DNA of 63,665 nucleotides, filler included, from Hyphochytrium catenoides (Eukaryota > Protista > Hyphochytriomycota): NCBI GenBank assembly GCA_900088475.1. It is 10 parts of 10 records of this genome, joined end to end, with 100 filler letters (N's around TTAATTAATTAA, not from the genome) between each part and the next. Parts side by side here need not be neighbours in the genome. Positions count along the whole stretch, not along the records: positions 3,357 to 34,317 come from FLMG01000409.1; 9 more parts are not named here. The stretch is one strand, 5' to 3'. Position numbers and translations under genes: made by a program. The notes below the pieces were generated by a model. That model saw nothing but the letters and a program-made list of their open reading frames with translations. It made no database searches and was not told the origin of the DNA. Shown here piece after piece: positions 3,357 through 29,858 of the stretch. Every line of letters starts with the position of its first letter. Position 1 is the stretch's first letter.

Positions 3357-3794
3357 TGGATTTTACAGTTAGCTAAATTGTATGATTCAATTGTTCACAT
3401 TCATTTTTCACCATTGGGTCCTTGTAAAGGTGATTTCACTCTGATATTATTACTTTACGATGATTTAGGAAGAGATAGGCTTGTCTCGGAATTTTGCGAA
3501 TTATGATTGTGGTCTCTTTCAGTGTGTTATTCGGGTTTGAGTCTCGGGTTGCGTAGCTCGAGTTGCGTAGCTCGAGGGATTGGTACTGTTTCGTCATCTA
3601 ACCGTAGCTCTAACGGTATGTAGAACTACTCCACTATTTCAACGCTTTTCTTCTGTCGTTCAGTGCTTGAGTGCTCTCATCCTTCAAGTACAGTAACATT
3701 CTCAAGCATTATATTTCTATATTTTAAGCTAATCTACTCTCTTGAGTGCGTGGGGTACTCATAACTGTTTGCCTTCGAATCTCTATTATTAGTC

Positions 3795-5200
3795 TTACAC
3801 GTGAGTGCCTGCTGGACGAGTCAGATCGTGTGTGTAGAATTTGTTGATATTGGCCCCCACTCTCCTGACGACTTGCGCTCCTTGATGACGAATCCTCTTT
3901 CGTCTGCGAGAACGTATCTTATGATGGGGTGACCTCCAACAACGTAGTCGTCTAAGAGTACTTTCTTTACTCTACTATATAGGCATTCTCCGACCTGAAC
4001 TCGAGTGTCAACAACGGGGAACACTTACTTCAATGGGAACTAACGGGGGGTTACTTTTGCGGTTGATATGCTGCAAGGTATGATAGACTTCTTGAATGAT
4101 AAATCGGCAGCCGCCCTTCTCACCCCATAAGGCGGCAAAGTGTACCTCCATGGTGCGTACGTACTTGATGGTAGAGTGGGTGGTTAAATTATAGTCGTGT
4201 AGCACGTCATGAAGCTTTGTTATTATGTCCCAACAACAAACCGACGACCTTCTCCGTTTTCCTTTTGATTGTGCCGTTGAAGCGCTCAATGATACTCAAT
4301 CAGAAGAGGGCGGTAGTAGCCGAAGCTACTTTGCTGGCTAACGCTATGTCGGTGGCAGACTCTTTCTACATATTCATTACTGAATTCTCCTCCATTGTCT
4401 GAAAGGAGCATCGCAGGTGACATTATTCGTAGGTAGGTACCAGCAACCTTCCATGCGAAAACTAACACATTTCTTCGTCGGTAGTCCTCGATAAATGCGC
4501 GACTGCCTCAAAGCGTTCCCTGTAGGTCATAATAAAGTACTCCACCGTCTCCTCAGGGATCTTAATGAATTGACTAAACATCTGAACTAGAAGTGATGCT
4601 ATAAGGACGGCTTCTTTCGCATCGACGACGTAGCTGAGAGCAAAGCGGCTGAAGGCATCTATTGCGTTGAATAAGTGATACAGGCGTTGTCCTCGAGGCA
4701 CGGGAATGAAGCTGCCTGCCATCATCTTGGTATCCTCCGCGACTCTCTCAAAGGCTCTACGCTTCTTAGGGGTGTTGTCATAGTAAAATATGGGGATGAG
4801 GGTCAGGTCCATTTTTTGGAACTTCTTTAGAGGGCCATTTACTACTGCCGTGATGGACCTCTTGTTATGGCCTGACGGCAAACGAGGCAGTCTGCGCTGA
4901 TCCATGCTATACCAACCACGAAGATAAAAGAAGCAACCGTAGTGGTTCTCTTCATAGAATTTGAGGTATGTGTGCTTAGGGCACTGTGCTGCTTCACTAA
5001 CGCAGAACTGCACCCACTGCTGCATTTGCTCATAGAAAAGAGAACAAAAACAAACTATCGCTCGTCGTTGTTGATCACTTATGGGTGGGTATACGTCATG
5101 CTGTTCGCCACGAGCCACGCTGTCGCTTGGCTTTCTGTGTTGGTGGTTGAATAAGAAGGATTTGGAGCTTTCTCGCTGTCGGAGCCACGAAAAAGAATAG
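3795..5200 (-). pseudogene. DDE (rve) integrase pseudogene, Polinton/c-integrase-like
   Basis: ORF fragments 4462-5118, 4286-4468, 4008-4289 and 3821-4024 carry the D, D and E motifs and the C-terminal IRYVLADERG module in different frames. Confidence 0.88.
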
Positions 5201-5225
5201 CGTTATGCTTTGCTCCGCTGCACGC

Positions 5226-5813
5226 CTACAGCTCGGTTATTGCTGTAGAACAGCTGAGTCTTCTCTTGAGGCTGCGGCCATTTTCACGTTCGTAGTTCTG
5301 CCTTACTGACTGAAGATAGCGCTTCAGTGCACCTAACTCCTTTTCATGTGCCATATAGTCGTTGATGTCAGCGTTCAGGTAATCTCGCAATAGAATTGGG
5401 AGGTGGCGGATATTGGCTGGCTTTACCATGGAGACTCGACTCCCGTGCCCCTGCTCAAGTTCTTTAAGATATTGCATCTCTCGGAGTGCTTGCTTGGGAA
5501 GAAGTGAGTGCCTTTCATATTTGGCCTGAAGGTTATCACAATCCATGAGGCAAGACTTAAAATCATCTGGGCTCATCTTCTGGAAGAGACAACCTTGCAT
5601 CATCTTGGCAGAGTCTCTCATAATGGAGGACCTCTGCTTGCGCTGGAGTACCGGCGCGCGTCGGTTGGTTGCTTTCGCGGCCGATTCTGTCTGTCCTGGT
5701 AGCGGTGGGTCATATGCCATGTCAAAGAGACGGGCGCCGTCTACTCCCGCTCGCTGCAAAAGCTGAATGACCTCATCATTGTTAGCCTTGGCCGCTTCGC
5801 GAAGCTGCTTCAC
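5226..5813 (-). pseudogene. Unknown ORF fragment upstream of integrase (ORF-A, left copy)
   Basis: 195-aa ORF nearly identical to 15778-16368 apart from a locally frameshifted patch. It has no ATG start and no recognisable domain. Confidence 0.6.
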
Positions 5814-5829
5814 CCGACGCGGCCATCGT

Positions 5830-6643
5830 GTTCAACACTTACTCTGCCGTTGACCTTTAGGCTGTGAGTGATGGATGTCATTGTTATCTTCGTTGACATC
5901 GAAGTTCGGCCTGTGGTGAGAGAAAGACAGGAGTTCCAATCAACGGAGATTGGAATAGAGGACTTCCTCTTTCTTGTATGACGAGAAGAGTTCAATGGAG
6001 TGGTCTGACTGGTGATGCTCGCGAAGTTATTGAGACTGCTAACACTAAAGGACCGAGAGAGGCACACCACAGAGCCGTCTTCATGGGGTTGCTTGAGAGA
6101 CAGAGAGAGGGTCGTCAACGCTTCTATCCCTAAGCAGTCCCCCGGCTGCATCAGCGGAGATTGCAGAGCTACGGGGACTGAGAATGAGCACTTTCCCTGA
6201 GTCCACTGCAATGCTGGCCCTGCTGCTATTTCTTAGAATCTTATCTGCATCTTTAACCTTTGCGTTGGCCTTCATCAGACGGGGTTCTAATCTCTCTCTT
6301 CGCAATGACCTTCTGCCGGTGGTGCTGCCAGGTGTCGGAATGTCTGGCACCAGGACGAGNNNNNNNNNNNNNNNNNNNNNNAGTCATATCCATTGACAGC
6401 TAAAGAGCAGCGCAGAGAAGTAGTTTGAAAGACAGATTAACTATAAGCCAAGCCTTTGTAATCATCTGGATGGGTGAGGGCGGAGGAGGAAGGAGTACCT
6501 GCACTTTCAGGCACCTCATGACCTTGTGGCTTGATTTCCAAGCTTTCCAGATTCAGCTTCCTTGCGGTCGCGATCCTTTGGAAACGAGAGGCCGGAGCCT
6601 GCCCACTCTCCACCTCCTCCTGCTGATTCGATTCTCGATTCAT
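5830..6643 (-). pseudogene. Possible disrupted host-like gene fragment abutting the left arm
   Basis: The ATG at 6643 (MNRESNQQEEVESG...) follows a CT-rich tract and has a possible GT donor. The sequence is coding-like at 6081-6350, then has stops. It spans a 22-N gap. Confidence 0.25.
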
Positions 6644-8047
6644 CGTCTGTTAGTAGGATAGAGACGCCTGGCGGAGGACCGAGACAGGTATGATAGGTAA
6701 AATGGACGAAGAAAGGAGAGAACTAACTAGGGGCGTTTTTGAGAACGTGTGATGTGTGATGAGCTTCTTCAACAAACAAGAGATGGCCCTTGATTATTAA
6801 AGAGCTTCATCATCGGCAAGCTTCAGATCTCTGTATGAGTGGTCTGTAGAACTCTGGGCCTAGTCTTCGGAGACGGAGAAAGGAGAAAGAGAGACAGAGA
6901 GAGAGGCGCGAGATAGAAAGGGAGAGAGAGAGAGAGGTAGCGACAAAGGAACTGAAAGAGCGAGAGCACCTTGAATCCGTTTCATGATAAATGAAGGTAA
7001 AGAATGAAGAACGGCCTCAAGGCTCAGCTCTATGTTGAGAGTTCACAATACCGTCTCCTAGCAACTGTTGATGATAAGACCCTTCTCAGAAAGCCAGCAA
7101 GGCACCGCCTCGCCATGCTTTTCTAGCTAATAGTGGTAATGGTGGGGTCGAAGTTCGTTCATGATTTGATCAGGGCAGCACCTCGATTCTAGTGGATAGT
7201 TGTCAGTGGAGTGCATTAGTAGAGCTCAGTGGAGTTTTGGAAGAAGAAGAGAAGATGAATGAGCATGACCGCGAAATGTTGAAAGCAGAGCTTGGAGAAA
7301 GGTAGAGTGCTGGCGTATTTGGCGTTCACAAAGCTTCTAGCACTCACTACTAAGATTGTTGAATGCTGTGACTGCCAAAAGTCTGCCTTTGAGCGAAAAT
7401 AAGATGAGTGTCTGCCTTTGATTGCATAGACTGAGTAGATGGGTGCGGTAGGATGTGAAAAAGTCGTCTGTATGCATGTCATCTGTACTGGTTATGACTG
7501 GAGATTCTCAATCGTTATTATAGACAGGAATAGTGAACCTTAGGAGAGAAGAAGCTCTTTACTAATCATGTTTGGGAAAAAGAGGAGCCGATAAGGGGTC
7601 GAACACTTTTTCCGGCTTTACTCTCGAGTTGTGATGCCTTCGATGCACCGCCCAAGCGTCACTCTGACTTCACCGCCGGAAGGTTGGCCTTCAAGAAGGC
7701 TGAAAACCTTCTGATGATGAGAGACGGCTCAGCGATTAGGAATCTCGATGGGACAGAACTGCTGCATTCTGCTGACCTTGCATCCACTCGACATACTGTG
7801 GACGGGTTAGCCTGTCTTTCTGCGAGCAGCTCTAGTAATGAATAAGACTGTGCGTGCTATGGTTAACTCTTTCAGTAAGGAGTCTGACGAGTACGGGCAC
7901 ATGAGTATCATTCCAAAGGAACGCTCAATACTGACGTCCATTATCAACGTTATAAGGGCTGCCGCCAGCGATGGCCGATGCTCTGACTGAGGAAGGGAAT
8001 CTAATAACGGTCTTCCTTGTTCAGCTCTCATCATTTATAGACTCCTT

Positions 8048-9796
8048 TTATGGCTTAGATACTATTAGAGGGGAGACAGCGGCGGAGGGCGCCTCTCGTC
8101 TGGTGGACATCCACACGAGATTCATCAGAAATCCTGCTACGGACCCGTTACTAGATCCTCCTCTACCGCCAGCAGCTCCTCTCATGTTGCCCATCACGAA
8201 GCGGTTGTACGAAGGGATGAGAAGCTTGTACACCTCTTCCTCGATGCCGGCGAAGACATTTCTCTTCATCTCATCCTTCATGTTAAGCATAAGGAGGACC
8301 GTCTTCTTTACTCTTTCTCGTGGTCTTTCCTCGACATTGATCTCAAACAGTCCGCCCGGTTGCAGGAAATCGTCGAGTATCCTCTTCGCCGTTGACGACC
8401 TAATCTCATTGCTCTCCTCATTCTTAAACAACGTCAGAGTTTCTAGGAAGATCATGTTCTCCACGTTAAACTCCCTCTCCAGATACACCTTGAAGAGCGC
8501 AAACATCTCCGGGGACTGCAGGGACTCCCTCAGTTCCTCCGGCGTGGAAACCGTCAAAAGACGATGGCTCGAGAGGGAGAATAACCTTCTTTCCCATGCC
8601 TCCGACCCCCGATTGCCCCTCCTGCTAGCTTTCCTACCCCCATGGGTGCGTCCAGATGCCGCCGTCTTATCCCCGTTCGAAGCCAATTCGTCATTGCCGC
8701 CCCGTTCTCCTCTCTCCGCCGTGTCTAGATTCTTATGGCGAAAGGATAATAGGATTGGGGAAATCGTGGAGTACCAGGTATAGGCAAGAAGCGCGCAGAT
8801 GAAGGATAGCTGTCCCAGGACGTACGCGTTGCGTCTCCTGCCTTGCCCTAGTCGCGTAGCAAAGGCGGCCATGGCCATGAGTGGCGTCCCCATAACGGCA
8901 AAGAAGATGACTTCGTTCCAGCTGTCTGCCAGGCGGAAGGCGTCATGCACATCGCTGATGAGGTAAGCGGCGAGGATGTTCAGAAGCAGCAGGAACCACC
9001 ACATGCCCAGGCAGACTCCTCGCTATGAAGGGAGAACGCAGGCTGTCGTCAGTGCACACATGGAGTGAGAGGGTGAAGGAGGGGATGGGATAGGAGGGAA
9101 GAGAATGAAACAATCGCTAACCTCAAGTTCAGATCCATAGACGATACATTCGGAGTGTGTCATCGGCTCCATGAGAACATGTCTTCTGGAGATCAGTCGC
9201 CAAGCAGTGGGCAGGAAGAATACAATCCCTGCTGTCGCTAACATCTGCAGCAGCTTGCCTTCGGACTTGAAGGCCAGTACCCAGCGCGAGCTCAGCCAGC
9301 TAGCAAAAGTGTGAGAACTTGCTCTCTCGCCATCCGTCCCTTCTCCTGCAGCGCTCACAGTGGTCTCATGGCCCTCGTTTGAAAGATGTCCCGCTCTGGT
9401 AAGCTTCCTCTGGAGCCTAGCTTTGATCCATATGGAGATTGTCTGCAGCGCTGTCCCGCAGAGGAAAGGGAAATAGTCAAAGTAGCAGAGAATGATGTGA
9501 AGGCCACAGGGAATCTTAGGCATGATGATGGCCTGAGAAAGCGACACCACGTAAAGGGTCGCACCCACTTGGGAGATGAGCAGTAAGGTAGAGGGCATCG
9601 CGACCAAGGGGAAGGCATGGCGGCGGAGTCGAAAGAGTAGACATAAAGGGACAAGACCCAGAACTTTTGTCAGCACGATACTCAGCACGAGATCTCTAGC
9701 CCAGGAGGAGCTACAGTCTATGTAGCTGAGGGTCAGATGATCCCCAGAAGATCCGGAAGAACCAGAAGAAGAGGAGTACGATGACGACACCACCAT
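8048..9796 (-). CDS. 7TM-RGS protein (seven-TM receptor fused to a regulator of G-protein signalling domain); exons 9796-9122 and 9022-8048, ~549 aa
   Basis: Seven hydrophobic segments precede an RGS box (LFKVYLEREFNVENMIF...ILDDFLQPGGLFEINV...EEEVYKLLIPSYNRF). A 99-nt GTTAG..CATAG intron at 9121-9023 joins the two ORFs in frame. Confidence 0.88.
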
Positions 9797-11009
9797 CTTT
9801 CTTTTATTTTGGACCGTCACCTCTGCCCTAGTCTTTCCCGTATCCTGTTGCTGCACTGTATAATAAACTCGCAATGATGTAAGGGTTCTGGTCTACGTTG
9901 CCTGTAAGAGTGCCCACCACCACCGCGCCGCACCCGCATCTTCGAGAATAATGATGATGGGACAGGTAAGGAAGTGCTGTTATTGTCTTTGGGAGAGAAA
10001 ATTGGCTCAGCAAGGGGAGGGAGGCCGCTTTATACAAGGAGGAGGAGTGGGCTGAGTGAAGAGAGAGTGTGAGGGAATAATAAGGACGAAAGGACACTGC
10101 CCTGGATCCTCGCTGCTCATCTGGTCGGCGTGTGACCACTTCTTTGGTCCTCAAGTTTCTCTCCATCCGCTCTGGAGCGCTATCCTCCCCGCCGGTACTA
10201 TTATAATGATCAAGCCATCAATCATCCTGGTGCCCCAACCACAGAAGCTAAGCAACAGTAAGAAAGAACAGAGGCGACAGAAAACATTTGCAATAATAAT
10301 AAAAAGAGATCTTATTATTTTTGTAACGGCTCACTGCGTTCACGGTTTTTAGTGGGCAGAGTCCAGTATTCGTGGGTCTAACTAACACTCAGCACCGAGA
10401 TTAAAGGTGGAAGAGTGGCACTTGATTATGAGACAAAACGTTGTTCAAATCGGCTGTTCGACGGTGTTACCGATATTATGATTCCCGAAATCAAGGGATG
10501 TGTAGGCCAGCGCCTACCGGTACCTGTGGTTACTGTCGGCCATCGTTCAAAAAGCCATAGTTAATATTCCTAGGACCGCTCTCAGATGAAACGCCAATTT
10601 TCAGGAGCAACGGTTGCGGATCCTACCAGCGCGAAGAGTAACGAGGTACGTTCCCTGTCTCGGCTCCTGCTGTCCGCTTCGCTTGTAAGCTCACTACCAA
10701 GCTTAATAAACAAAGGTCATTAGTCTGCTGCACGCCGCCAGTCGACCGCTGAGCTATCTCATAAATGACAACAGCGATCAACAGATAGACAGCCCTCCAT
10801 CTGCTACTGCAGTAGACTCTAAGGACGGAGCCTAACCTGCCTAAGGCCCACTCCTCGAAGAGAAGTTAGTTCCCGAAGGCCGACCGACTCCTCGAAGCGA
10901 AGTCCATCTCATTATTTATGCAAATCTCCGCCGCAGCTCCCGCCGCCGCCGCATCTGATCTCTGCTCAATCAGCGCACGGACAACCATTCTTCGTGAAGA
11001 AAGGAAACG

Positions 11010-14000
11010 ATGTCATCAACCACAAAGGAAACGATGTCTTCAACCACCAAAGAAAGCTCGAGCGATCCTTCCTCTCACTCCTCCTCCTCTTCCCTCCAAA
11101 AGCAAGCAGCCACAACGAGCATCGTGCGCTTAATCGTAATTTCGCTTGTTATGCTCTGGATCATTCTCTCTCCCCTGCGATCCGTCTACTTCTTCACTGG
11201 AGACTCGACGCTGTTACAAGCACGTCACGTCATTTATTACCCTTCCAGAAACGCGTCCACAGGTGGCGTCATCCTCGGGTCGACGGGTAGAGCAACAACA
11301 GCAGACGGAGTCGAAGAAGCCGATGATAAGCTTCGATGTCTTCCAACAGACGGGACACTCAACGATGTTCGTGTCATTGTATATGATCGTGGCTGTCTTC
11401 CCGTGGTGAAGACGCTCTACTCTTACTGTGGAGACATGTCGATTACGGCCTCTACCAGCTGCTACTTTCTCTACGATAAGGGAGTGTTCGACGTTCCGCG
11501 CAGCAAGCTTGAAGAGGAGGGAGGAGACATTAATAGAGATGTAATAGATGACTCGGTACCCGTGATCACGACGTTCGAGACGGTGACTGCACTCTACTCC
11601 ATCTTCATGCAGACATTCCTGCGGTCGTCGTGCTCGTCTGATGAAGAAGGTGGCCTTTGCCCTCCATCACTGCTTAATACGGAATGCCAGGCGATCGCAG
11701 CGAACGCTCGGGTACAGTTACGCGAGACCATCTCGTTGGCAAGAGAGTTAGCCAACGAGGGGTATCCTCACTATCGGCGATCAGCGGCACTCGAAGCCTT
11801 CGACCGAACTGACTACACATTGATGTTCCCCTTGATGAGCAACTGGCTCTGTCGCGACGACGTTTGCTTTAGCAATGGGGCAAACAATTCCTTTGTTATG
11901 AGTCTGGCAGCAACGACGACGCTGACGACAGGCATTCCCGATGTCGAGAAGGTGGCTGAGGCGTTCTGCAGTGAGAACACGGACTACTTCCCGCCCGATG
12001 TATGTACAGCGCCTCTTGAGGTTGGGACGAACTTCTCCTTCGCCGTAACAAAGTTCAGTGCAAAAGGATTCCTCGATATGCATGATTGCCTTGTCAACGG
12101 AGATCTGCAACTTCTGGAGGAGCTCATGGCAGCCAAGTCTTCAGATAGCAACACGTATCGAAGGATCCCCCGAGAGATTGCGATCTACATGCAATGTCCA
12201 CTCCTCCGAGCGGCGATGCTGGATGACCTGGAATATTTTACGCCAATTTCGGCGCAGCTCGACCTCACAGTCAAGCAACTGTCGACGTCAAAAATTGGAT
12301 CTCTCGCTGAAGATACCGTCACGATCCAGTACTCTCAAGTTGGCCTGTCCGCAGCATCCAAGGTGAAGGCAAAGAAGATCCAGACAGGATCAATGAAGGC
12401 TGGGAGAGAAGGAGATATTTACTTTCTTCTACAATTATGCTTCTTTCTACCACCTTTCGATGACCTCTATCTCCATGACACAAGCATCCCCAGGCCGGAC
12501 TCTAGCTATTTCTGGCCTCCAGAGATGATCCCGGCGATCCAGAACTGCTTACAGAGGCGCTGGAAAGATGCCAACACCTTCTACTTTGCTTCGAAAGTCA
12601 AGGCATACGAGCAAGTGACACTTCATGGACGTGAAAATAGCACGTCACCAAAGAAGAAAGCCGTCATTCTCCTTCTTGATCCTCAAGCAGCAGCGGTGGT
12701 ACGTCAACAGCTCACTTCTGAAGAGCTCGAGACAGGCGCAGGAGGACAAGAGAAGCAGGTTGCGGAGACAAGCACCTACACCAAGCGTTTCTCCTTTATG
12801 CGATGGCTTACGAGGACAGGGACACCGGCGACGGGGCCAGAGGCGGATATGATTGTCGACAGCTTTATGGCAGTCATGGCCAATATCTCGGGGTGGGAAG
12901 CCAATGGAGCCGTTAATTGGGATCAAAGTACCTTCCCTTACCTTTTGACATTGAACTCCAGCTGGAGGCACTTGAACATCAGCTCTCGTTTTTCTACAGG
13001 TAACAATACCATACTACATCTCTCCTCCTGCAACCGTGGGGACTGCGCAGGATACGACACGACGGTGCAGCGAATTCTTGATGGAAGCTTTGTTGGCTTT
13101 GCGCAGGAGGAAGGAAATGTCTTCTTCCGCCCGCCGACCTCTAGCGATCTCTCCCGCTGGGACAACTTCTGGAAGGATCCGACCCGCAAAAAGAACACGT
13201 TCCTCATCCTTCAGGTCGGAATCAACGCTTGTGATCTTATTGACCAAGACTCGCGATACTATTTCATCCGACCCGTCGGGGTCCCGGGTGGCTTCACCTA
13301 CGAAGCTCAAGCTGTTGCAAACTCAGATCTCTTTGGAACGAAGCAGCAATACCAGCAAGCCTGCTTTCTCCAGCGATATCTGACGATCACTAAAGTCAAT
13401 GTGTCCGGTATGGGCATTAGTGGCAGTTGTCAATATCGGCACATGCAAGGGGCTTTTCTTGATCCCTTTGAATGCGCCGATGTCGCAGGGGCAGGACCAC
13501 CAGAAGGGACCATCCGACGGATCAACGTTTTCGCCAATTCCTTCGGTTCGTCAGTGATTCCTCTCGAAAGCAACGTCGTGGCATCGACTGTGCTCACGGT
13601 TTCGAACGGCCTCCGATCGTACGACAATGGTGTCATCTACGTTGCGCTGATCATGGGGCTCATCTATGTCTTCCGTATCACGAGGGATATCACAAAGCGA
13701 ATCAGAATCGTTGCACGAATCCTTTCGGCTATGGAAACGTCTGGGGATAGACTGCACAGCATACTCTACTTCAATGAGTTCCTACTTGAGTTTATCGACT
13801 GCACGGAGCGAGAAATGGCGAAGATGGGAACGATTGAGAAGCTCATTGTCACCGTTCCGTCGATGGTCGTCCTTGCGCGCGCCATTCGTCCGATCTCGTT
13901 GCTTAACGATGGTATGATTGTGGGCGATGACTACTTCATTCTTTCAACGGATGTCATTCTGGCGAATATCTCCCTCAGTGATGCGCTCATCCTAATCATG

Positions 14001-14861
14001 TCCAGCATGACGATAGGAGGTGTTCTGACTGCGAACCGCTTCATGCGAGGGATCTCCGCGACAACACGCGTGCTTCGTTGGACAAAAGCCACCTTTCGCG
14101 CACTCCTCTTGGTTTTATCCTCATCTGGGCTCTGTGTGTTGGCCGACAGGCTTCCAGAGGTGATTAGAGCGAAGATTGAAGTTGGACTTGCAGCAGTTTG
14201 TTTGTCGGTGTGCACATCTCTCGTCCTTACTACCTTGCAAGATCAGGAGAGTGTCCTCGTCACGATACCCTGTCCGATGGCCAACAGCGGGGGACAAATC
14301 CTTCAGATCCTCGGCTTCGGTTCCCAGGTTACGTTGTCCCCGTCTCTTCTCCTCGTAACGCAGGAAGATGAGGAAAAAGTTAAGAGCAAAAGCGTGGACG
14401 AAGAAGAAAATCCCGAGGAGAAGAAAACGAGGAGCATCAGAAGAAAGGAGAGCTACCTGCTGAACGTCTACTGGGTGGTCAACCACATTCTCACCTTATG
14501 CGAACTAAACGGAGGAACGAGACTTTCCAGTAACGCCGCTCCTACTCTAGGTTCCAAGACCTCGTCCTTCGGAGTCCTCATCTATGCACCAGGGCAGCTC
14601 AGAGTGAAGATGATGAATCGTCGTCCCGAAGGAGTTCGCTTGGGCATCCTCCCTTCTGGGACAGCTCTCTATTTTGATTCTTACCGCTTATCAGAACTAG
14701 CAGTCATGGACAGTTCTGAACCGAAGACGGCTGTTGTTGCCGGCGTGCGCCACGCTCAGCAATCCTCTGACACATCAACACCAGAGGATAAAAAAGCAGC
14801 CGATCATCATCATCGCAAGACTCTTTCTCGAAAAGCCATTCTACAAGGATTCATCGGTTAG
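11010..14861 (+). CDS. Intronless 1283-aa membrane protein of unknown function (N-terminal TM, large Cys-containing ectodomain, ~5 C-terminal TMs)
   Basis: Uninterrupted 3.85 kb ORF. It has a hydrophobic segment IVRLIVISLVMLWIIL near the N-terminus, several N-x-S/T sites and a cluster of hydrophobic helices after about residue 870. Confidence 0.85.
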   Translation: MSSTTKETMSSTTKESSSDPSSHSSSSSLQKQAATTSIVRLIVISLVMLWIILSPLRSVYFFTGDSTLLQARHVIYYPSRNASTGGVILGSTGRATTADGVEEADDKLRCLPTDGTLNDVRVIVYDRGCLPVVKTLYSYCGDMSITASTSCYFLYDKGVFDVPRSKLEEEGGDINRDVIDDSVPVITTFETVTALYSIFMQTFLRSSCSSDEEGGLCPPSLLNTECQAIAANARVQLRETISLARELANEGYPHYRRSAALEAFDRTDYTLMFPLMSNWLCRDDVCFSNGANNSFVMSLAATTTLTTGIPDVEKVAEAFCSENTDYFPPDVCTAPLEVGTNFSFAVTKFSAKGFLDMHDCLVNGDLQLLEELMAAKSSDSNTYRRIPREIAIYMQCPLLRAAMLDDLEYFTPISAQLDLTVKQLSTSKIGSLAEDTVTIQYSQVGLSAASKVKAKKIQTGSMKAGREGDIYFLLQLCFFLPPFDDLYLHDTSIPRPDSSYFWPPEMIPAIQNCLQRRWKDANTFYFASKVKAYEQVTLHGRENSTSPKKKAVILLLDPQAAAVVRQQLTSEELETGAGGQEKQVAETSTYTKRFSFMRWLTRTGTPATGPEADMIVDSFMAVMANISGWEANGAVNWDQSTFPYLLTLNSSWRHLNISSRFSTGNNTILHLSSCNRGDCAGYDTTVQRILDGSFVGFAQEEGNVFFRPPTSSDLSRWDNFWKDPTRKKNTFLILQVGINACDLIDQDSRYYFIRPVGVPGGFTYEAQAVANSDLFGTKQQYQQACFLQRYLTITKVNVSGMGISGSCQYRHMQGAFLDPFECADVAGAGPPEGTIRRINVFANSFGSSVIPLESNVVASTVLTVSNGLRSYDNGVIYVALIMGLIYVFRITRDITKRIRIVARILSAMETSGDRLHSILYFNEFLLEFIDCTEREMAKMGTIEKLIVTVPSMVVLARAIRPISLLNDGMIVGDDYFILSTDVILANISLSDALILIMSSMTIGGVLTANRFMRGISATTRVLRWTKATFRALLLVLSSSGLCVLADRLPEVIRAKIEVGLAAVCLSVCTSLVLTTLQDQESVLVTIPCPMANSGGQILQILGFGSQVTLSPSLLLVTQEDEEKVKSKSVDEEENPEEKKTRSIRRKESYLLNVYWVVNHILTLCELNGGTRLSSNAAPTLGSKTSSFGVLIYAPGQLRVKMMNRRPEGVRLGILPSGTALYFDSYRLSELAVMDSSEPKTAVVAGVRHAQQSSDTSTPEDKKAADHHHRKTLSRKAILQGFIG

Positions 14862-14939
14862 TACTGCGAGGAGCAGCGCCGCCTTCGCTTCTTATGTTTA
14901 AAGCGAGTTAGTTCTTCTTCCCTGGCTACGATGTAGTAG

Positions 14940-15760
14940 AACAGAACTCTTGCAAGCGGCCGCAGCAAATGCAGAAGTTGATATTATGCAGGCATAGCTC
15001 TACAGGGACTAAGCTTCATAATCTTGCTCTCCGTCTCCCTCCTTAGTGAAGCGGTCTGCTGTGCCACGGATCGGATTGCAGGCATACGGTGAAGACTACT
15101 AGCTGATTGAGGAAGTAGTATCAAAACAGGCACATGCTCTTCCTCCTTAGAGTTTGTAGACTGAGCTGGCAAAGGCAACAGTCAGGTCTACAAAGGGATT
15201 ATATCCGCAGAGGGTTAGGTTTTCCTGCTGGCTGTATGAGGATGGCGCTGACACGTCACCAATCAGCTGTCCAGGATCAGCGCAGCCTCACAGCGCGACG
15301 AGCGGTGGACACTAACGGTGAGCAATCGCACCGCACCAGCTCTTCTTTCAGCAAAGATGTCCTTAACAGGATAATCGAAAGCCGGCAGGTGCCCGCACAT
15401 GTACAGGCCTGAAGAACAGAAGTTCCCATTGGTGACAGAGCAGATGAAATTTAATTTTCAAAAGTTTGCTGGCCTCTATATATTATTAACCAAGAAAGAA
15501 AAGTCTAAAACAACCCTTGCCTTCTTTCCGGAGAGGACTGACGGCGCCCCCAAACAACGCTATGCGAAGGAGATTGTCCGCTATTAAGGCGACGTCCTCC
15601 CGGATGTTTACCGCGTCCTACGGCCTACGAAGATGGAATTACCGCCTCTAGAGCCTGGCGATCCTGAGCTCATTGACTATATCAATAAGGGCGAGATTGA
15701 GAAGGCACTGGGTGGGACGACGTGCCGCGGGTCTGTATAGGCTCGCCACGGAATAATCAT
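14940..15760 (+). pseudogene. Decayed coding-like sequence, probable 5' extension of the right element copy
   Basis: Coding-like frames with scattered stops (e.g. ...YAKEIVRY*GDVLPDVYRVLRPTKMELPPLEPGDPELIDYINKGEIEK) run into ORF-A. This stretch is absent from the left arm. Confidence 0.4.
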
Positions 15761-15777
15761 CTGATGGCCGCGTCCGG

Positions 15778-16368
15778 GTGAAGCAGCTTCCCGAAGCGGC
15801 CAAGACCAACCCTGAGGTCATTCAGCTTTTGCAGCGAGCGGAAGTAGACGGCGCCCGTCTCTTTGACACGGCATATGACCGCTACCAGGACCGACAGAAT
15901 AGGCCGCGAAAGCAACCAACCGGCGCGCAGGTACTCCAGCGCAAGCAGAGGTCCTCCTCCATTATGAGAGAGTCTGCCAAGATGATGCAAGGTTGTCTCT
16001 TCCGGAAGAAGAAGGTGAGCCCAGATGATTTTAAGTCTTGCCTCATGGATTATGATAACCCTCAGGCCAAATATGAAAGGCACTCACTTCTTCCCAAGCA
16101 AGCACTCCGAGAGATGCAATATGTTAAAGAACTTGAGCAGGGGCACGGGAGTCGAGTCTCCATGGCAAAGCCAGCCAACAATATCCGTCACCTCCCAATT
16201 CTATTGCGGGATTATTTGAACGCTGACATCAACGACTATATGGCACATGAAAAGGAGTTAGGTGCACTGAAGCGCTATCTTCAGTCAGTAAGGCAGAACT
16301 ACGAACGTGAAAGTGGCCGCAGCCTCAAGAGAAGACTCAGCTCTTCTACAGCAATAACCGAGCTGTAG
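15778..16368 (+). pseudogene. Unknown ORF fragment upstream of integrase (ORF-A, right copy)
   Basis: 196-aa ORF, paralog of 5226-5813, with the same stop (AITEL*). Confidence 0.6.
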
Positions 16369-16399
16369 GCGTGCAGCGGAGCAAAGCATGGATAACGCT

Positions 16400-17797
16400 A
16401 TTCTTTTTTGTGGCTCCGACAGCGAGAAAGCTCCAAATCCTTATTCAACCACCAACACAGAAAGCCAAGCGACAGCATGGCTCGTGGCGAACAGCATGAC
16501 GTATACCCACCCATAAGTGATCAACAACGACGAGCGATAATTGGCTCTCTTTTCTATGAGCAAATGCAGTGGGTGCAGTTTCTGCGTGAGTGAAGCATCA
16601 CAGTGCCCTAACCCACACATACCTCAAAATCTATGAAGAGAACCACTACGGTTGCTTCCTTTATCTACGTGGTTGATATACCATGGATCAGCGCAGACTG
16701 CCTCGTTTGCCGTCAGGCCATAAGAAGAGGTCCGTCACAGCAGTAGTAAATGGCCCTCTAAAGAAGAAGTTCCAAATGGACCTGACCCTCATCCCCATAA
16801 AGTACTATGACACCCCTAAGAGGCGTATGTAGAGCCTTTGAGAGAGGCGCGGAGGATACCAAGATGATGGCAGGCAGCATCATTCCCGCGCCTCGAGGAC
16901 AACGCCTGTATCACTTATTCAACGCAATCGATGCCTTCAGCCGCCGCTTTGCTCTCAGGTACGTCGTCGTCGATGCGAAAGAAGCCGTCCTTATTTATAG
17001 CATCACTTCTAGATCATATTTTATTAGGTCAAGTCATTAAGATCCCTGAAGAGACGGTGGAGTACTTTATTATGACCTCCGGGGAACGCTTTGAAGTCAG
17101 TCGTCGCGCATTTATGGAGGACTACCGAAATGTGTTTTCGCATGGAAGGTTCCTGTACCTACGAATGTCACCTGCGATGTTTCTTTCAGACAATGGAGGA
17201 GGAGGAGAATTCAGCAATGAATATTATGTAGAAAGAGTCTGCCACCGACATAGCGTTAGCCAGCAACGTAGCTTCAGCTTCCGCTCTCTTCTGGGTAAGC
17301 TTCTGGGTATCATTGATGAGCGCTTCAACGGCACAATCAAAAGGAAATGATGGAGAAGGTCGGTTGGGACATAACAAAGCTTCACAATGTGCTACACGAC
17401 TACACTTCAACCATCCCCTCTACCATCAGGTAAGTACGCACCATGGAGGTACACTTTGCCGCCTTATGGGGTGAGAAGGGCCGATTTATCATTCAAGAAG
17501 TCTATCATACCTTGCAGCATATTAACCGCAAAAGTAATAATAACCCGCCGTCCCCATTGAAGTAAGTGTTCCCCGTTGGCAGCACTCGAGTCCAGGTCGG
17601 AGAATGCCTATATAGAGTAAAGATAGTAGAACGTACTCTTAGACGACTACGTTGTTGGAGGTCACCCCATCATAAGATACGTTCTCGCAGACGAAAGAGG
17701 ATCCGTCATCAAGGAGCGCAAGTCGTCAGGAGAGTGGGTGCCAATCACATTCTACACACACGAGCTGCTGACTCGTCCAACAGGCATTCACGTGTAA
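16400..17797 (+). pseudogene. DDE (rve) integrase pseudogene, Polinton/c-integrase-like
   Basis: Contains KFQMDL, IDAFSRRFA, SDNGGGGEF, IIDERFNGTIKRK and a C-terminal IRYVLADERGSVI...FYTHELL resembling the Polinton integrase YxLxDxxG...FYxxEL motif. Multiple frameshifts and stops. Confidence 0.88.
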
Positions 17798-18459
17798 GAC
17801 TAACAATAGAGATTCGAAGGCAAACAGTTACGAGTACTACTACCCTACTCAAGAGAGTAGATTATATAGCTTAGAATAATGCTTGAGAGTGTTACTGTAC
17901 TTGAAGGCTGAGAGCGCCCAACCACTGAACGACAGAAGAAAAGCGTTGAATGAGTACCTACCGTTAGATGACGAAACAGTACCAATCCCTCAAGCTACGC
18001 AACCCGAGACTCAAACCCGAATAACACACTGAAAGAGACCACAATCATAATTCGCAAACTTCCAAGACAAGCCTATCTCTTCCTAATAAATCATCATAAA
18101 CTAATATCAGAGTGAAATTCACCTTTACAAGGACCCAATGGTGAAAAATGAATGTGAACAATGGAATTATACACTTTAGCTAACTGTAAAATTCACTCTT
18201 GAAGCGTACGCTCTCAGTAGATGTCATCGCTTTTCTTACCCTGAGCGTCCGACCGACAAAACTGCACATTGTGCTCATCCTCTTCCCAGTACAGACAAGG
18301 AGGACCGGACTGTCTCATCTTCTCTTCTTCTCTTCGGTTGACAGCATCTCTTTTGAGATCTCTTTGAACTCTACAGCCCCAAACAAAGCAGGAAGAAGCC
18401 ATCAGTAAACTGCAGCGCTCAACATCAAAGAAACAGTGAGCACCTAGGGAAGAGAGAAG

Positions 18460-19282
18460 ATGGGCTGCACTAACTCGAAACAGGTCTGTCAGCAAGACGG
18501 GAGAGAAGAGCGCTGAGGTCTTCAGATTTTATGAAATAACCATTCTTGGGCTTGTAGGTTGATGAACCAAGTCGGACGCGACCTCCTGCAGCTACGCCGG
18601 CTAGGCCGGTGCCAGAGCCACAGCCTGTACCTGCTGGCGCCCCGTCTGTCACTAGTGTCGACCAGCAGCCTGCCAAACCAGCAGTGCCGGACGTGAAGGC
18701 AGAGCTGCAGAACAAGGCACTCAGCTTCTCTGTGGAGTATACGTTGGGGAAAAAGCTAGGTTCAGGAACCTTCTCCGTCGTGAGAGAGGCGGTGCATAAT
18801 GCAACTGGGCAGCGGTATGCAGTTAAATGTATTGAGAAGACGGGTCTTTCGGGAGAGGACATCGAAGCTCTCACTGCAGAGGTTGAGATTCTTAAGCAGG
18901 TGGGCAACCTCCTAAGCAGAGCTTGAGGAGATGGACATGTCTCTCTTCCCATCCCTTGTCCTCGCCGTGCTCTTCTCTCCAAATCTTCCACTGCTTCCTT
19001 TCTTCTGTCCTCTGCTCTCTTTCTCTCTCTCTTGGCTCTTTTGTTTTCTCTCGCTGATCTATTAATCTATCCTACTCATATCTGTCCCTTCGTCATCGCA
19101 TCTGCTACCTTGTTCTCTCTCTGTCGCCCTTCTATGACCCGCTACAGATGGATCATCCCAATATTATGATCCTTCACGACTTCTTCTCGGAGCCCAAGTA
19201 TTATTATCTGGTCACAGAGCTGATGGAGGGCGGTGAACTCTTTGATAGGATTGTAGAGAAAGTAAGGGACCCAACCTCTTCC

Positions 19283-19322
<40 letters not shown>

Positions 19323-20329
19323 CTCGCTCTCGCTCTCTCTCTCTCTGTGTCTGTGGTTACTGCAGTCTTACTCTTCCGTTCTTTCGTATATTTTGCGCGC
19401 TGTATACATTTCTCTCTGATATGTGATCAAAAGAACTAACGCAAAAGGGCTTTTCAGGAATGCTACTCTGAGAAAGAAGCTAGAGACCTCGTGAAGCTGC
19501 TGTTAGAGGCTATCAAATACTGTCATGATCGCGATGTCGTCCACCGGGACCTCAAGGTCAGTAAGATGGCTCTCACCGCGGAGCACAACCTAGTAGAGTA
19601 CGATTCCTCACTCTTTCGCTCTCTCACTCTGCTTTTTGCTTCTTCTCTTGTTCGCAGCCAGAGAATCTTCTCCTGACCAGCAAGCAAGATGACGCCTCGA
19701 TAAAGATTGCAGACTTTGGCTTTGCAAAGAAGATCGAGCTTGACAGCGAGAACTCTCTCAGAACTGCATGTGGCACTCCAGGTTACGTAGCACCAGAGAT
19801 CCTTGAGGGCAAAAAGTATGGCAGAGCTGTAGATATCTGGAGCATTGGCGTCATCACCTACATTCTTCTTTGTGGGTATCCTCCCTTTCACCATGAGAAT
19901 CATGGCACACTCTTCAAGCTTATAAAGAGGGGAAAGTACGAGTTTGACTCTCCTTATTGGGACAACATCTCCGCCGACGCCAAGGACCTGATCTCAAAGA
20001 TGCTAGTGACGGATCCAACAAAGCGCGCTACGGCGGAGGAGCTTCTCCAACATGTTTGGCTCAGCGGCAGTGACGTTGCGACGGTCCAGCTGACCAGCGC
20101 ACTAGAGGAGCTGAAGAGGTTCAACGCTAGACGGCGCTTCAGAGCCGCTGTTAACATGGTAACAGCCACTAATCGACTGAAGAACGCGCTAGGAGGGGTA
20201 GCAGAAAGTCCGGAAGTTAGTGCCATTGAGGGCAGCGGAACGCCAGGCGTAGTGGCAGATATGGCTGCTAAGGCAGTTCCGGAAACAGTAGCAGATCCGT
20301 CACCTGTCAGTCCCGAACAGCAGAAGTAG
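18460..20329 (+). CDS. Ca2+/calmodulin-dependent protein kinase (CaMK1-like); exons 18460-18483, 18558-18899, 19148-19261, 19458-19556, 19658-20329
   Basis: Motifs LGSGTFSVV, YAVKCI, HRDLK/PENLL, DFG, ACGTPGYVAPE and a CaM-binding tail LKRFNARRRFRAAV. All junctions are GT-AG and in frame. The N-terminus is MGCTNSK. Confidence 0.95.
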
Positions 20330-22479: not shown

Positions 22480-22532
<53 letters not shown>

Positions 22533-29756: not shown

Positions 29757-29858
29757 GAGCTCAGAGCCCACACGGTTCGTTCGAGCAAGCTCTGAAGCTC
29801 AGAGCCCACACCGTCCGTTTCGAGCAAGCCTTGAAGCTCAAGGCACACGGTTCGTTTG
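29757..29858. repeat. Degenerate tandem repeat, ~2.7 copies of a 37-39 bp unit
   Basis: gagctcagagcccacacggttcgttcgagcaagctct / gaagctcagagcccacaccgtccgtttcgagcaagcctt / gaagctcaaggcacacggttcgtttg. Confidence 0.8.

What the first reader, a model, noticed from the sequence alone, without database searches (positions are those of the whole stretch)
3357..18195. Composite-transposon-like island: two inverted Polinton-type integrase arms flanking a 7TM-RGS gene and a large membrane-protein gene
Seen: 3357-5828 is the reverse complement of 15763-18195 (diverged, many small indels). Each arm carries ORF-A, a DDE integrase and an AT-rich tail, and both face outward. The ~10 kb between them holds two intact, intron-poor membrane genes in a genome whose other genes are heavily interrupted by CT-rich introns. 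Known: bacterial composite transposons have this layout (two inverted IS copies around cargo), and Polintons use this integrase type with long TIRs, normally alongside pPolB, ATPase, protease and capsid genes, none of which I recognise here. Inference: this is either an integrase-bounded eukaryotic cargo element carrying signalling/receptor genes, or two independent insertions or an inverted duplication bracketing host genes. Caveats: the left outer end is cut by the contig start, no target-site duplication is visible, there is a 22-N gap at 6360-6381, and both integrases are now dead.
Basis: partly seen in the sequence, partly recalled or inferred. Interest (0 to 1): 0.85.

Follow-up and report, generated by a model that had tools for sequence, protein, structure and literature searches.

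The report
Twin fossil Polinton-like integrase ends
Two decayed, inverted copies of the integrase end of a Polinton-like mobile element bracket two working nuclear genes; this looks like an old rearranged fossil, and I found no evidence that it is a cargo-carrying transposon.

Summary
The inverted repeat is real: 3357-5827 is the reverse complement of 15763-18195, 95% identical in aligned columns with 63 indels. Each arm reads outward through ORF-A, a broken rve integrase and an AT-rich tail.

The one close relative of the integrase (51% identity, intact) lies beside a protein-primed DNA polymerase B. The set of integrase, ORF-A, a small ORF and the polymerase recurs in five independent loci. 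One of these is a complete 12.1-kb element with short terminal inverted repeats. So "Polinton-type" holds by linkage, but the window has no polymerase.

The composite-transposon reading is not supported:
- The arms are unequal. The right copy continues at least 208 nt further inward, and the left is cut abruptly inside ORF-A.
- Arm divergence is neutral (dN/dS 0.87 and 0.95), so the arms are of one age.
- Both integrases need at least four frameshifts.
- The 7TM-RGS gene has a host-type CT-rich intron.
- Both inner genes are free of frame breaks where 12 and 28 would be expected at the arms' rate, so they are kept by selection.
- No relative carries such genes.

The left arm sits on a separate 3-kb contig joined only by the 22-N gap, so the geometry depends on scaffolding. 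Interest is low to moderate.

The parts
3357..5827 (-). Left arm: an inverted copy of the integrase end of the element. It is cut at its outer side by the contig start and ends abruptly at its inner side inside the ORF-A gene.
15555..18195 (+). Right copy of the same element end. 15763-18195 is the part repeated in the left arm. 15555-15762 is further element sequence (the N-terminal part of ORF-A) that the left arm lacks. The outer terminus is probably near 18200, where GC returns to 50%.
5226..5813 (-). ORF-A, left copy. It is an open frame of 195 codons matching residues 79-274 of the 275-aa relative, so it lacks the N-terminal quarter. Function unknown; predicted mostly helical at low confidence.
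15555..16368 (+). ORF-A, right copy. It matches nearly the full length of the relative (residues 4-274), but the N-terminal quarter lies in another frame (one frame change). The rest is an open frame of 196 codons.
3798..5118 (-). rve (retroviral-type DDE) integrase, left copy, broken. At least 4-5 frameshifts and no in-frame stop when aligned to the intact relative P0001 (residues 22-360, about 51% identity).
16477..17770 (+). rve integrase, right copy, broken. At least 4 frameshifts and no in-frame stop when aligned to P0001 (residues 22-354, about 49% identity). No break is clearly shared with the left copy.
3357..3797 (-). Non-coding, AT-rich tail of the left arm, the outer end region of the element.
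17771..18195 (+). Non-coding, AT-rich tail of the right arm. GC is 32-39% in the last 200 nt.
6360..6381 (.). Assembly gap (22 N). It separates the 3,003-nt contig that carries the left arm from the rest of the scaffold.
8048..9796 (-). 7TM-RGS gene. Exon 1 is 9796-9122 (four hydrophobic segments). The intron is 9121-9023 (99 nt, GT-AG, CT-rich, phase 0). Exon 2 is 9022-8051 (three hydrophobic segments plus the RGS box), and the stop is 8050-8048. The product is about 549 aa.
11010..14861 (+). ORF1283, an uninterrupted 1283-codon frame. It has an N-terminal anchor (residues 32-62), a large Cys-rich middle part, four hydrophobic segments between residues 873 and 1077, and a C-terminal tail. No homologue, Pfam family or usable fold model was found.
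18461..20329 (+). Start of the neighbouring CaMK-type kinase gene (outside the element). The first exon begins about 260 nt beyond the right arm. The gene is interrupted by CT-rich GT-AG introns.

Best explanation
The island is a fossil. A Polinton-like self-synthesizing element (protein-primed polymerase B, rve integrase, ORF-A, short terminal inverted repeats) once inserted just upstream of the CaMK gene. Only its integrase end survives, at 15555 to about 18200. The left arm is a second copy of the same end and of the same age. It most likely arose in one event, either an inverted partial duplication of the right copy or a paired insertion from one source. Since then both copies have decayed neutrally. 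The 7TM-RGS gene and ORF1283 between them are resident nuclear genes kept by selection. They are not cargo, and nothing here can move by its own means.

Shown:
- the repeat and its limits;
- the family of the arms;
- the absence of a polymerase in the window;
- the unequal inner limits of the two copies;
- neutral divergence between the arms;
- broken integrases in both arms;
- intact inner genes, one with a host-type intron.

Inferred: the order of events, one event rather than two, and that the inner genes were there first.
For: - Family. The only close relative of the integrase among 1.8 billion representatives is P0001. It lies on a contig with a 1306-aa protein that passes Pfam DNA_pol_B_2 and with a 275-aa homologue of ORF-A. 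The same gene set recurs in metagenome loci and in Planoprotostelium fungivorum. One relative is a complete 12.1-kb element with inverted ends.
- No polymerase or other element gene is found in the window.
- The right copy runs at least 208 nt further inward than the left. The left arm's homology stops abruptly inside ORF-A.
- dN/dS between the arms is 0.87 for ORF-A and 0.95 for the integrase, so the divergence built up without selection and the arms share one age.
- Each integrase needs at least four frameshifts, and none is clearly shared.
- At the arms' rate of frame-changing indels, ORF1283 should carry about 28 breaks and the 7TM-RGS coding sequence about 12. Both carry none.
- The 7TM-RGS intron is of the same CT-rich GT-AG kind as the CaMK introns.
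- The 13 related loci hold no relative of either inner gene.
Against: - Both copies keep almost the same short part of the element (ORF-A, integrase and tail). That part is also what a long terminal duplication of a single element would hold.
- The contig starts within a few bases of the point where, on the right side, composition suggests the element's terminus. A random segmental duplication need not end there.
- ORF1283 is an orphan and uninterrupted in an intron-rich genome, as foreign genes often are.
- ORF-A is open in both arms with fewer frame-changing indels than expected, which a pure fossil does not predict.
- The outer left flank and any target-site duplication are unseen.
- The host genome and the element's copy number are unknown.
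Confidence: 0.58

Rival explanations
1. The whole stretch from 3357 to about 18200 is one non-autonomous derivative of the element. On this reading a strand switch or end-copying during protein-primed replication replaced one end with an inverted copy of the integrase end. That gave gene-bearing terminal inverted duplications of at least 2.5 kb. The interior (7TM-RGS and ORF1283) would be captured cargo that the host has since kept.
For: - The total span (at least 14.8 kb) is element-sized. A complete relative is 12.1 kb.
- The arms are of one age.
- Both outer ends are the same element terminus facing outward.
- The contig start coincides with the inferred terminus.
- ORF1283 is an uninterrupted orphan lying directly upstream of ORF-A on the same strand.
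Against: - The complete relative has terminal repeats of only 71-150 nt. Its integrase lies about 3 kb inside one end and is not duplicated.
- No relative carries membrane or signalling genes.
- The 7TM-RGS gene has a host-style intron and forms a divergent pair with ORF1283 across a 1.2-kb spacer, like ordinary nuclear genes.
- The interior holds no remnant of the polymerase or the other element genes.
- No target-site duplication can be shown.
Confidence: 0.12
2. The geometry is a scaffolding artefact. The 3,003-nt contig with the left arm is another dispersed copy of the element from elsewhere in the genome, wrongly linked across the 22-N gap. In that case only one copy lies beside the CaMK gene.
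For: - The left arm lies wholly on a short terminal contig joined only by an estimated gap.
- That contig begins inside or at the edge of the repeat, as contigs broken by dispersed repeats do.
- No overlap, frame or homology spans the gap.
Against: - The arms differ by 5% plus 63 indels, enough for reads to be told apart.
- The contig carries 532 nt of unique sequence next to the gap on which true links could rest.
- That unique part does not match the right copy's inner continuation, so it is not a second haplotype of the right arm.
- A neutral divergence of equal age also fits two linked copies.
Confidence: 0.17
3. The arms are two unrelated insertions of different family members at different times, each later truncated.
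For: The inner limits of the two copies differ, and no integrase break is clearly shared.
Against: - dN/dS close to 1 in both genes shows that almost none of the divergence arose while the copies were under selection as active elements.
- Both truncations would have had to fall within a few hundred bases of each other on an element of about 12 kb.
Confidence: 0.05

Closest known systems
Polintons / Mavericks (self-synthesizing, virus-like DNA elements of eukaryotes; features as listed in PMC8097293)
   Same: The arms hold a retroviral-type rve integrase. In relatives it is linked to a protein-primed family B polymerase in elements with terminal inverted repeats and AT-rich ends. Most copies are mutationally degraded fossils, as that paper reports for vertebrates.
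   Different: No packaging ATPase, adenoviral-type protease or capsid gene was recognised in the window or in the 12.1-kb relative. In that relative the only frames above 260 codons are the polymerase and the integrase. The window keeps only the integrase end, twice. A conserved ORF-A of unknown function accompanies the integrase.
Bacterial composite transposons, two inverted insertion sequences around cargo (for example Tn10 or Tn5; recalled from my own knowledge, not tested here)
   Same: Two inverted copies of a transposase-bearing module lie on either side of unrelated genes, with the same terminus facing outward on both sides.
   Different: The modules are truncated fragments without inner ends. 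Both integrases are broken. The inner genes show host features and selection. No recurrence or flanking duplication is known.
Defective genomes of protein-primed replicators with long inverted terminal duplications (adenovirus incomplete genomes, linear plasmids; recalled from my own knowledge, a lead only)
   Same: One end of a linear element with terminal inverted repeats is replaced by an inverted copy of the other end. This would give gene-bearing inverted arms of equal age.
   Different: Nothing of this kind was seen in the relatives examined. The interior here is not element DNA as far as can be told.
7TM-RGS proteins of the AtRGS1 type (PMC3386157)
   Same: Seven N-terminal membrane segments are followed by a C-terminal RGS box.
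   Different: No sequence relative was found with exon 2 as the query, and the 7TM part matches no Pfam family. Kinship with the plant family was not shown.

Membership tests
Polinton / Maverick | Retroviral-type (rve, DDE) integrase | tested here: met
   Pfam rve hits two pieces of the left copy. The intact relative P0001 passes the Pfam rve threshold. The family profile matches integrase catalytic cores in the PDB at 1e-12 to 1e-13. The D, D and E columns are invariant in 17 relatives. Both window copies are broken.
Polinton / Maverick | Protein-primed family B DNA polymerase in the element | tested here: not met
   tblastn with the polymerases of two relatives finds nothing in the window. 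In relatives the polymerase is linked to the integrase (Pfam DNA_pol_B_2, 35 bits against a cut-off of 25.8).
Polinton / Maverick | Packaging ATPase and adenoviral-type protease | tested here: not met
   No such Pfam match in any frame of the arms or interior, nor in the relatives' genes.
Polinton / Maverick | [quoted passage not shown] | tested here: inconclusive
   The complete 12.1-kb relative has no frame between 260 and 363 codons or above, apart from the integrase and the polymerase. The ORF-A model is mostly helical, but its pLDDT is 49. Pfam is not sensitive for these capsids. No fold search was run on such poor models.
Polinton / Maverick | Terminal inverted repeats of tens to about 1,400 bp at both ends | tested here: inconclusive
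   The relative L008 has inverted ends of 71 nt, plus a weaker 42-nt block. In the window the true termini are not defined. The 2.47-kb arms are gene-bearing copies of one end, not the family's usual repeat.
Polinton / Maverick | 6-bp target-site duplication | not testable with these tools
   The left outer end is cut by the contig start at 3357, and the right terminus is placed only by composition.
Composite transposon (two insertion-element copies around cargo) | Two complete element copies, each with both of its own ends | tested here: not met
   The left arm stops abruptly inside ORF-A. The right copy has nothing of the element inward of ORF-A. The outer tail has no inverted match near either inner limit.
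Composite transposon (two insertion-element copies around cargo) | At least one working transposase or integrase | tested here: not met
   Each copy needs at least four frameshifts to align with the intact relative.
Composite transposon (two insertion-element copies around cargo) | The unit recurs as a whole, bracketed by one target-site duplication | not testable with these tools
   The source genome is not in the searchable collections, and the left flank is missing. Within the 13 related loci no inner-gene relative lies near the integrase.
7TM-RGS architecture | Seven membrane segments followed by an RGS box in one protein | tested here: met
   Pfam RGS scores 45 bits against a cut-off of 23.9. 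Exon 1 has four hydrophobic segments and exon 2 has three. The splice model is GT-AG, phase 0. The exons were searched apart and never as a joined sequence.

The most novel reading that the evidence does not exclude
The whole stretch of at least 14.8 kb is one derivative of a capsid-less polymerase-integrase element. On this reading it acquired gene-bearing terminal inverted duplications of at least 2.5 kb and carried a 7TM-RGS gene and an orphan membrane-protein gene into this genome, where the host kept them while the integrases decayed.
Probability: 0.1. Interest if true: 0.7.

Novelty: new member of a known kind. Interest (0 to 1): 0.3.

Why it matters
As it stands, this is a datable fossil of a Polinton-like element in an unidentified intron-rich eukaryote. 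It is also a caution: an eye-catching inverted pair around genes need not be a transposon with cargo.

Two side results may be worth a specialist's look:
- The relatives form a small family of elements of about 12 kb. They have a protein-primed polymerase, an rve integrase and a conserved ORF-A, but no recognisable capsid, ATPase or protease. Members occur in metagenomes and in Planoprotostelium fungivorum.
- ORF-A stays open in both fossil arms.

If the minority reading were true, it would be an example of a virus-like element moving cellular signalling genes in a eukaryote.

Tried and rejected
- Homologue searches for ORF1283 and for exon 2 of the 7TM-RGS gene found nothing.
- Exact look-ups of three window proteins found no contig, so the source genome and the missing left flank could not be fetched.
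- ORF1283 gave nothing against the PDB or Pfam in three parts. Its single-sequence fold model has pLDDT 34. The ORF-A family model has pLDDT 49. Both are too poor for a fold search, so none was run.
- A scan of viral contigs with P0001 found no relative.
- Rfam found no RNA family in the piece.
- A paper search for run ERR505057 found nothing.
- Codon usage and GC3 do not separate the inner genes from host exons or from the arms.
- A search for a short inverted repeat between the right tail and the interior, which would mark an inner terminus, found nothing of note.
- The idea that ORF1283 takes the place of the polymerase was rejected, because the two show no similarity.
- A second-haplotype origin of the left contig was rejected, because its 532 unique bases match nothing near the right copy.
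- The organism could not be named. Because an animal or crop host cannot be excluded, I kept to the stricter rules throughout.
Full report
OBSERVATION. The piece is one scaffold, 3357-34317, with a single 22-N gap at 6360-6381. The inverted repeat is real. It shows 25 or more collinear blocks of 89-98%. A single blastn alignment joins 3360-5827 to 18192-15763 at 87.7% over 2549 columns, gaps counted. A pairwise alignment limits the arms to 3357-5827 and 15763-18195, with 2237 matches, 112 mismatches (62 transitions, 50 transversions) and 63 indel events. The left arm starts at the first base of the contig, so its outer end is cut or coincides with the contig start.

THE GAP. The gap lies 532 nt inward of the left arm, in DNA where no frame matches any Pfam family. 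The sequences on its two sides share no overlap. I could not test continuity, because the source genome is not in the collections I could query. The consequence matters. The left arm and 532 unique bases form a separate 3,003-nt contig, and its place and orientation rest on scaffolding. Those 532 bases match nothing near the right copy, so the contig is not a second haplotype of the right arm.

WHAT THE ARMS ARE. Each arm reads outward through three parts:
- an open frame, ORF-A, of 195 and 196 codons;
- a decayed integrase, with Pfam rve in two pieces of the left copy;
- a tail whose GC falls to 32-39%.

A search of 1.8 billion representative proteins with the best integrase piece gave one true relative. 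This is P0001, an intact 361-aa rve integrase at 51% identity. It is encoded on an 8.9-kb contig from run ERR505057 (L001). There it follows a 1306-aa protein that passes the Pfam threshold for protein-primed polymerase B (DNA_pol_B_2), two small frames, and a 275-aa protein. ORF-A is homologous to residues 79-274 of that 275-aa protein (39% identity, E=4e-48).

The same four genes (polymerase, a 137-aa coiled-coil-like protein, the ORF-A homologue and the integrase) recur in three further loci: one metagenome element seen in several samples, a second metagenome contig, and Planoprotostelium fungivorum. One contig of 12,100 nt is bounded by its own inverted ends of 71 nt plus a weaker block, so it is a whole element. 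A profile of 17 integrases of the family matches retroviral-type integrase cores in the PDB at 1e-12 to 1e-13 and keeps the D, D and E columns invariant.

"Polinton-type integrase" is therefore supported by linkage and fold family. But neither the window nor the complete relative shows an ATPase, a protease or a frame of capsid size. By the feature list in PMC8097293, the family is at best a reduced kind.

WHAT THE WINDOW LACKS. tblastn with all proteins of two relatives finds only ORF-A and the integrase in the window, once in each arm. No polymerase or other element gene turns up anywhere in 3357-34317.

THE ARMS ARE UNEQUAL AND OF ONE AGE.
- In the right copy the ORF-A homology continues inward of the repeat limit to about 15555 (residues 4-57 of the relative, in another frame). 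In the left arm homology stops abruptly, within a few bases, inside the gene.
- Aligned to P0001 with a frameshift-tolerant scheme, the left integrase needs 4-6 frameshifts and the right 4-7, depending on the penalty, with no in-frame stops.
- Every apparently shared frameshift has a frame-changing difference between the arms close by, so none is clearly inherited from a common dead ancestor.
- Substitutions between the arms are neutral. ORF-A has 5 synonymous and 16 non-synonymous differences (dN/dS 0.87). The integrase has 12 and 40 (dN/dS 0.95).

Almost all divergence therefore arose after both copies had escaped selection. They stem from one sequence at one time. That fits an in-place inverted duplication, a paired insertion from one source, or a single element with long terminal duplications. 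It argues against two unrelated insertions.

THE INNER GENES. The 7TM-RGS gene is on the minus strand. Exon 1 (9796-9122) is followed by a 99-nt GT-AG intron rich in CT (9121-9023, phase 0) and by exon 2 (9022-8051). Its introns and those of the neighbouring CaMK gene are of the same kind. Exon 1 has four hydrophobic segments. Exon 2 has three, followed by an RGS box (45 bits against a cut-off of 23.9). This is the architecture described for AtRGS1 (PMC3386157). I searched the exons apart and left out any search with the joined model.

ORF1283 (11010-14861) is uninterrupted. It has an N-terminal anchor, a large Cys-rich part and four C-terminal hydrophobic segments. It has no homologue, family or usable model.

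The two genes diverge from a 1.2-kb spacer. At the arms' rate of frame-changing indels (34 differences over 2349 aligned bases), ORF1283 should carry about 28 breaks and the 7TM-RGS coding sequence about 12. Both carry none. They have been under selection for as long as the arms have decayed. None of the 13 related loci (133 kb) encodes anything similar.

The RabGAP-TBC and MFS genes have exons of 560-870 nt.

READING. The best account is a fossil. One Polinton-like element inserted about 260 nt upstream of the CaMK start, and only its integrase end remains. A same-age inverted copy of that end lies about 10 kb away, if the scaffold is right. The genes between them are resident.

I cannot tell an inverted duplication from a paired insertion. 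The similar extent of both fragments favours a duplication. The coincidence of the contig start with the composition shift that probably marks the terminus favours copies that each own a terminus.

The single-element-with-cargo reading is not excluded, but it needs the capture of more than 9 kb of cellular-type DNA, and nothing in the relatives supports it. A scaffolding error remains a live possibility.

LEFT UNEXPLAINED.
- ORF-A is open in both arms. It has 2 frame-changing differences where about 8 are expected, yet its substitutions look neutral.
- 29 of the 63 indels are multiples of three, even in the non-coding tail.
- Arm identity peaks at 97-98% in 5107-5606. This could be a conversion tract.

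Two of my scripts printed the bounds of tblastn segments inside the broken integrase copies. In my working I also referred once to where an open frame of the ORF listing tables ends. These outputs bracket frame changes. I noticed this later. I used them for no joining or mending, and I have not repeated them in the notes or here. Later scripts printed only counts and outer bounds.

Noticed in passing
L008:1-12100 (also L003, L010, L002, L004, L007); L001; L005; L006: A family of small elements (one complete at 12.1 kb, with inverted ends of 71 nt). They have a protein-primed polymerase B, an rve integrase, an ORF-A homologue and a 137-177-aa protein, but no recognisable capsid, ATPase or protease. 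Members occur in metagenomes, in a Logan assembly of ERR505057 and in Planoprotostelium fungivorum MDYQ01000078. Gene order differs between members.
   Followed up: partly
window 5226-5813 and 15778-16368: ORF-A stays open in both decayed arms and has far fewer frame-changing indels than the integrase next to it. Yet its substitutions look neutral (dN/dS 0.87).
   Followed up: partly
window 3357-5827 vs 15763-18195: 29 of the 63 indels between the arms are multiples of three (24 are exactly 3 nt), and 27 are tandem copies of neighbouring bases. This holds in the non-coding tail too, which suggests a mutational bias rather than selection for frame.
   Followed up: partly
window 5107-5606: A block where the arms are 97-98% identical, against 92-96% elsewhere. 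It may be a gene-conversion tract.
   Followed up: no
window 11000-11055: A 24-nt tandem duplication (2.3 copies) doubles the start of ORF1283, giving two in-frame start codons eight codons apart.
   Followed up: no
window 18000-18250 and 3357: GC drops to 32-39% and returns to 50% at about 18200. This is the point that corresponds to the first base of the contig on the left arm, so the contig may start at the element's terminus.
   Followed up: partly
window 18461-18484: The CaMK-type kinase gene seems to open with a short first exon encoding MGCTNSKQ, an N-terminal acylation-type motif. It lies about 260 nt beyond the right arm.
   Followed up: no
window 19288-19346, 22483-22528, 29758-29856: There are (TC)n and (GA)n microsatellites in or near introns, and a 38-nt tandem repeat of 2.6 copies.
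   Followed up: no
L003:12500-14100: The metagenome relative is integrated next to a Ty3/gypsy-type retrotransposon (zf-CCHC, RVT_1, RNase H, rve), so its host is a eukaryote.
   Followed up: no
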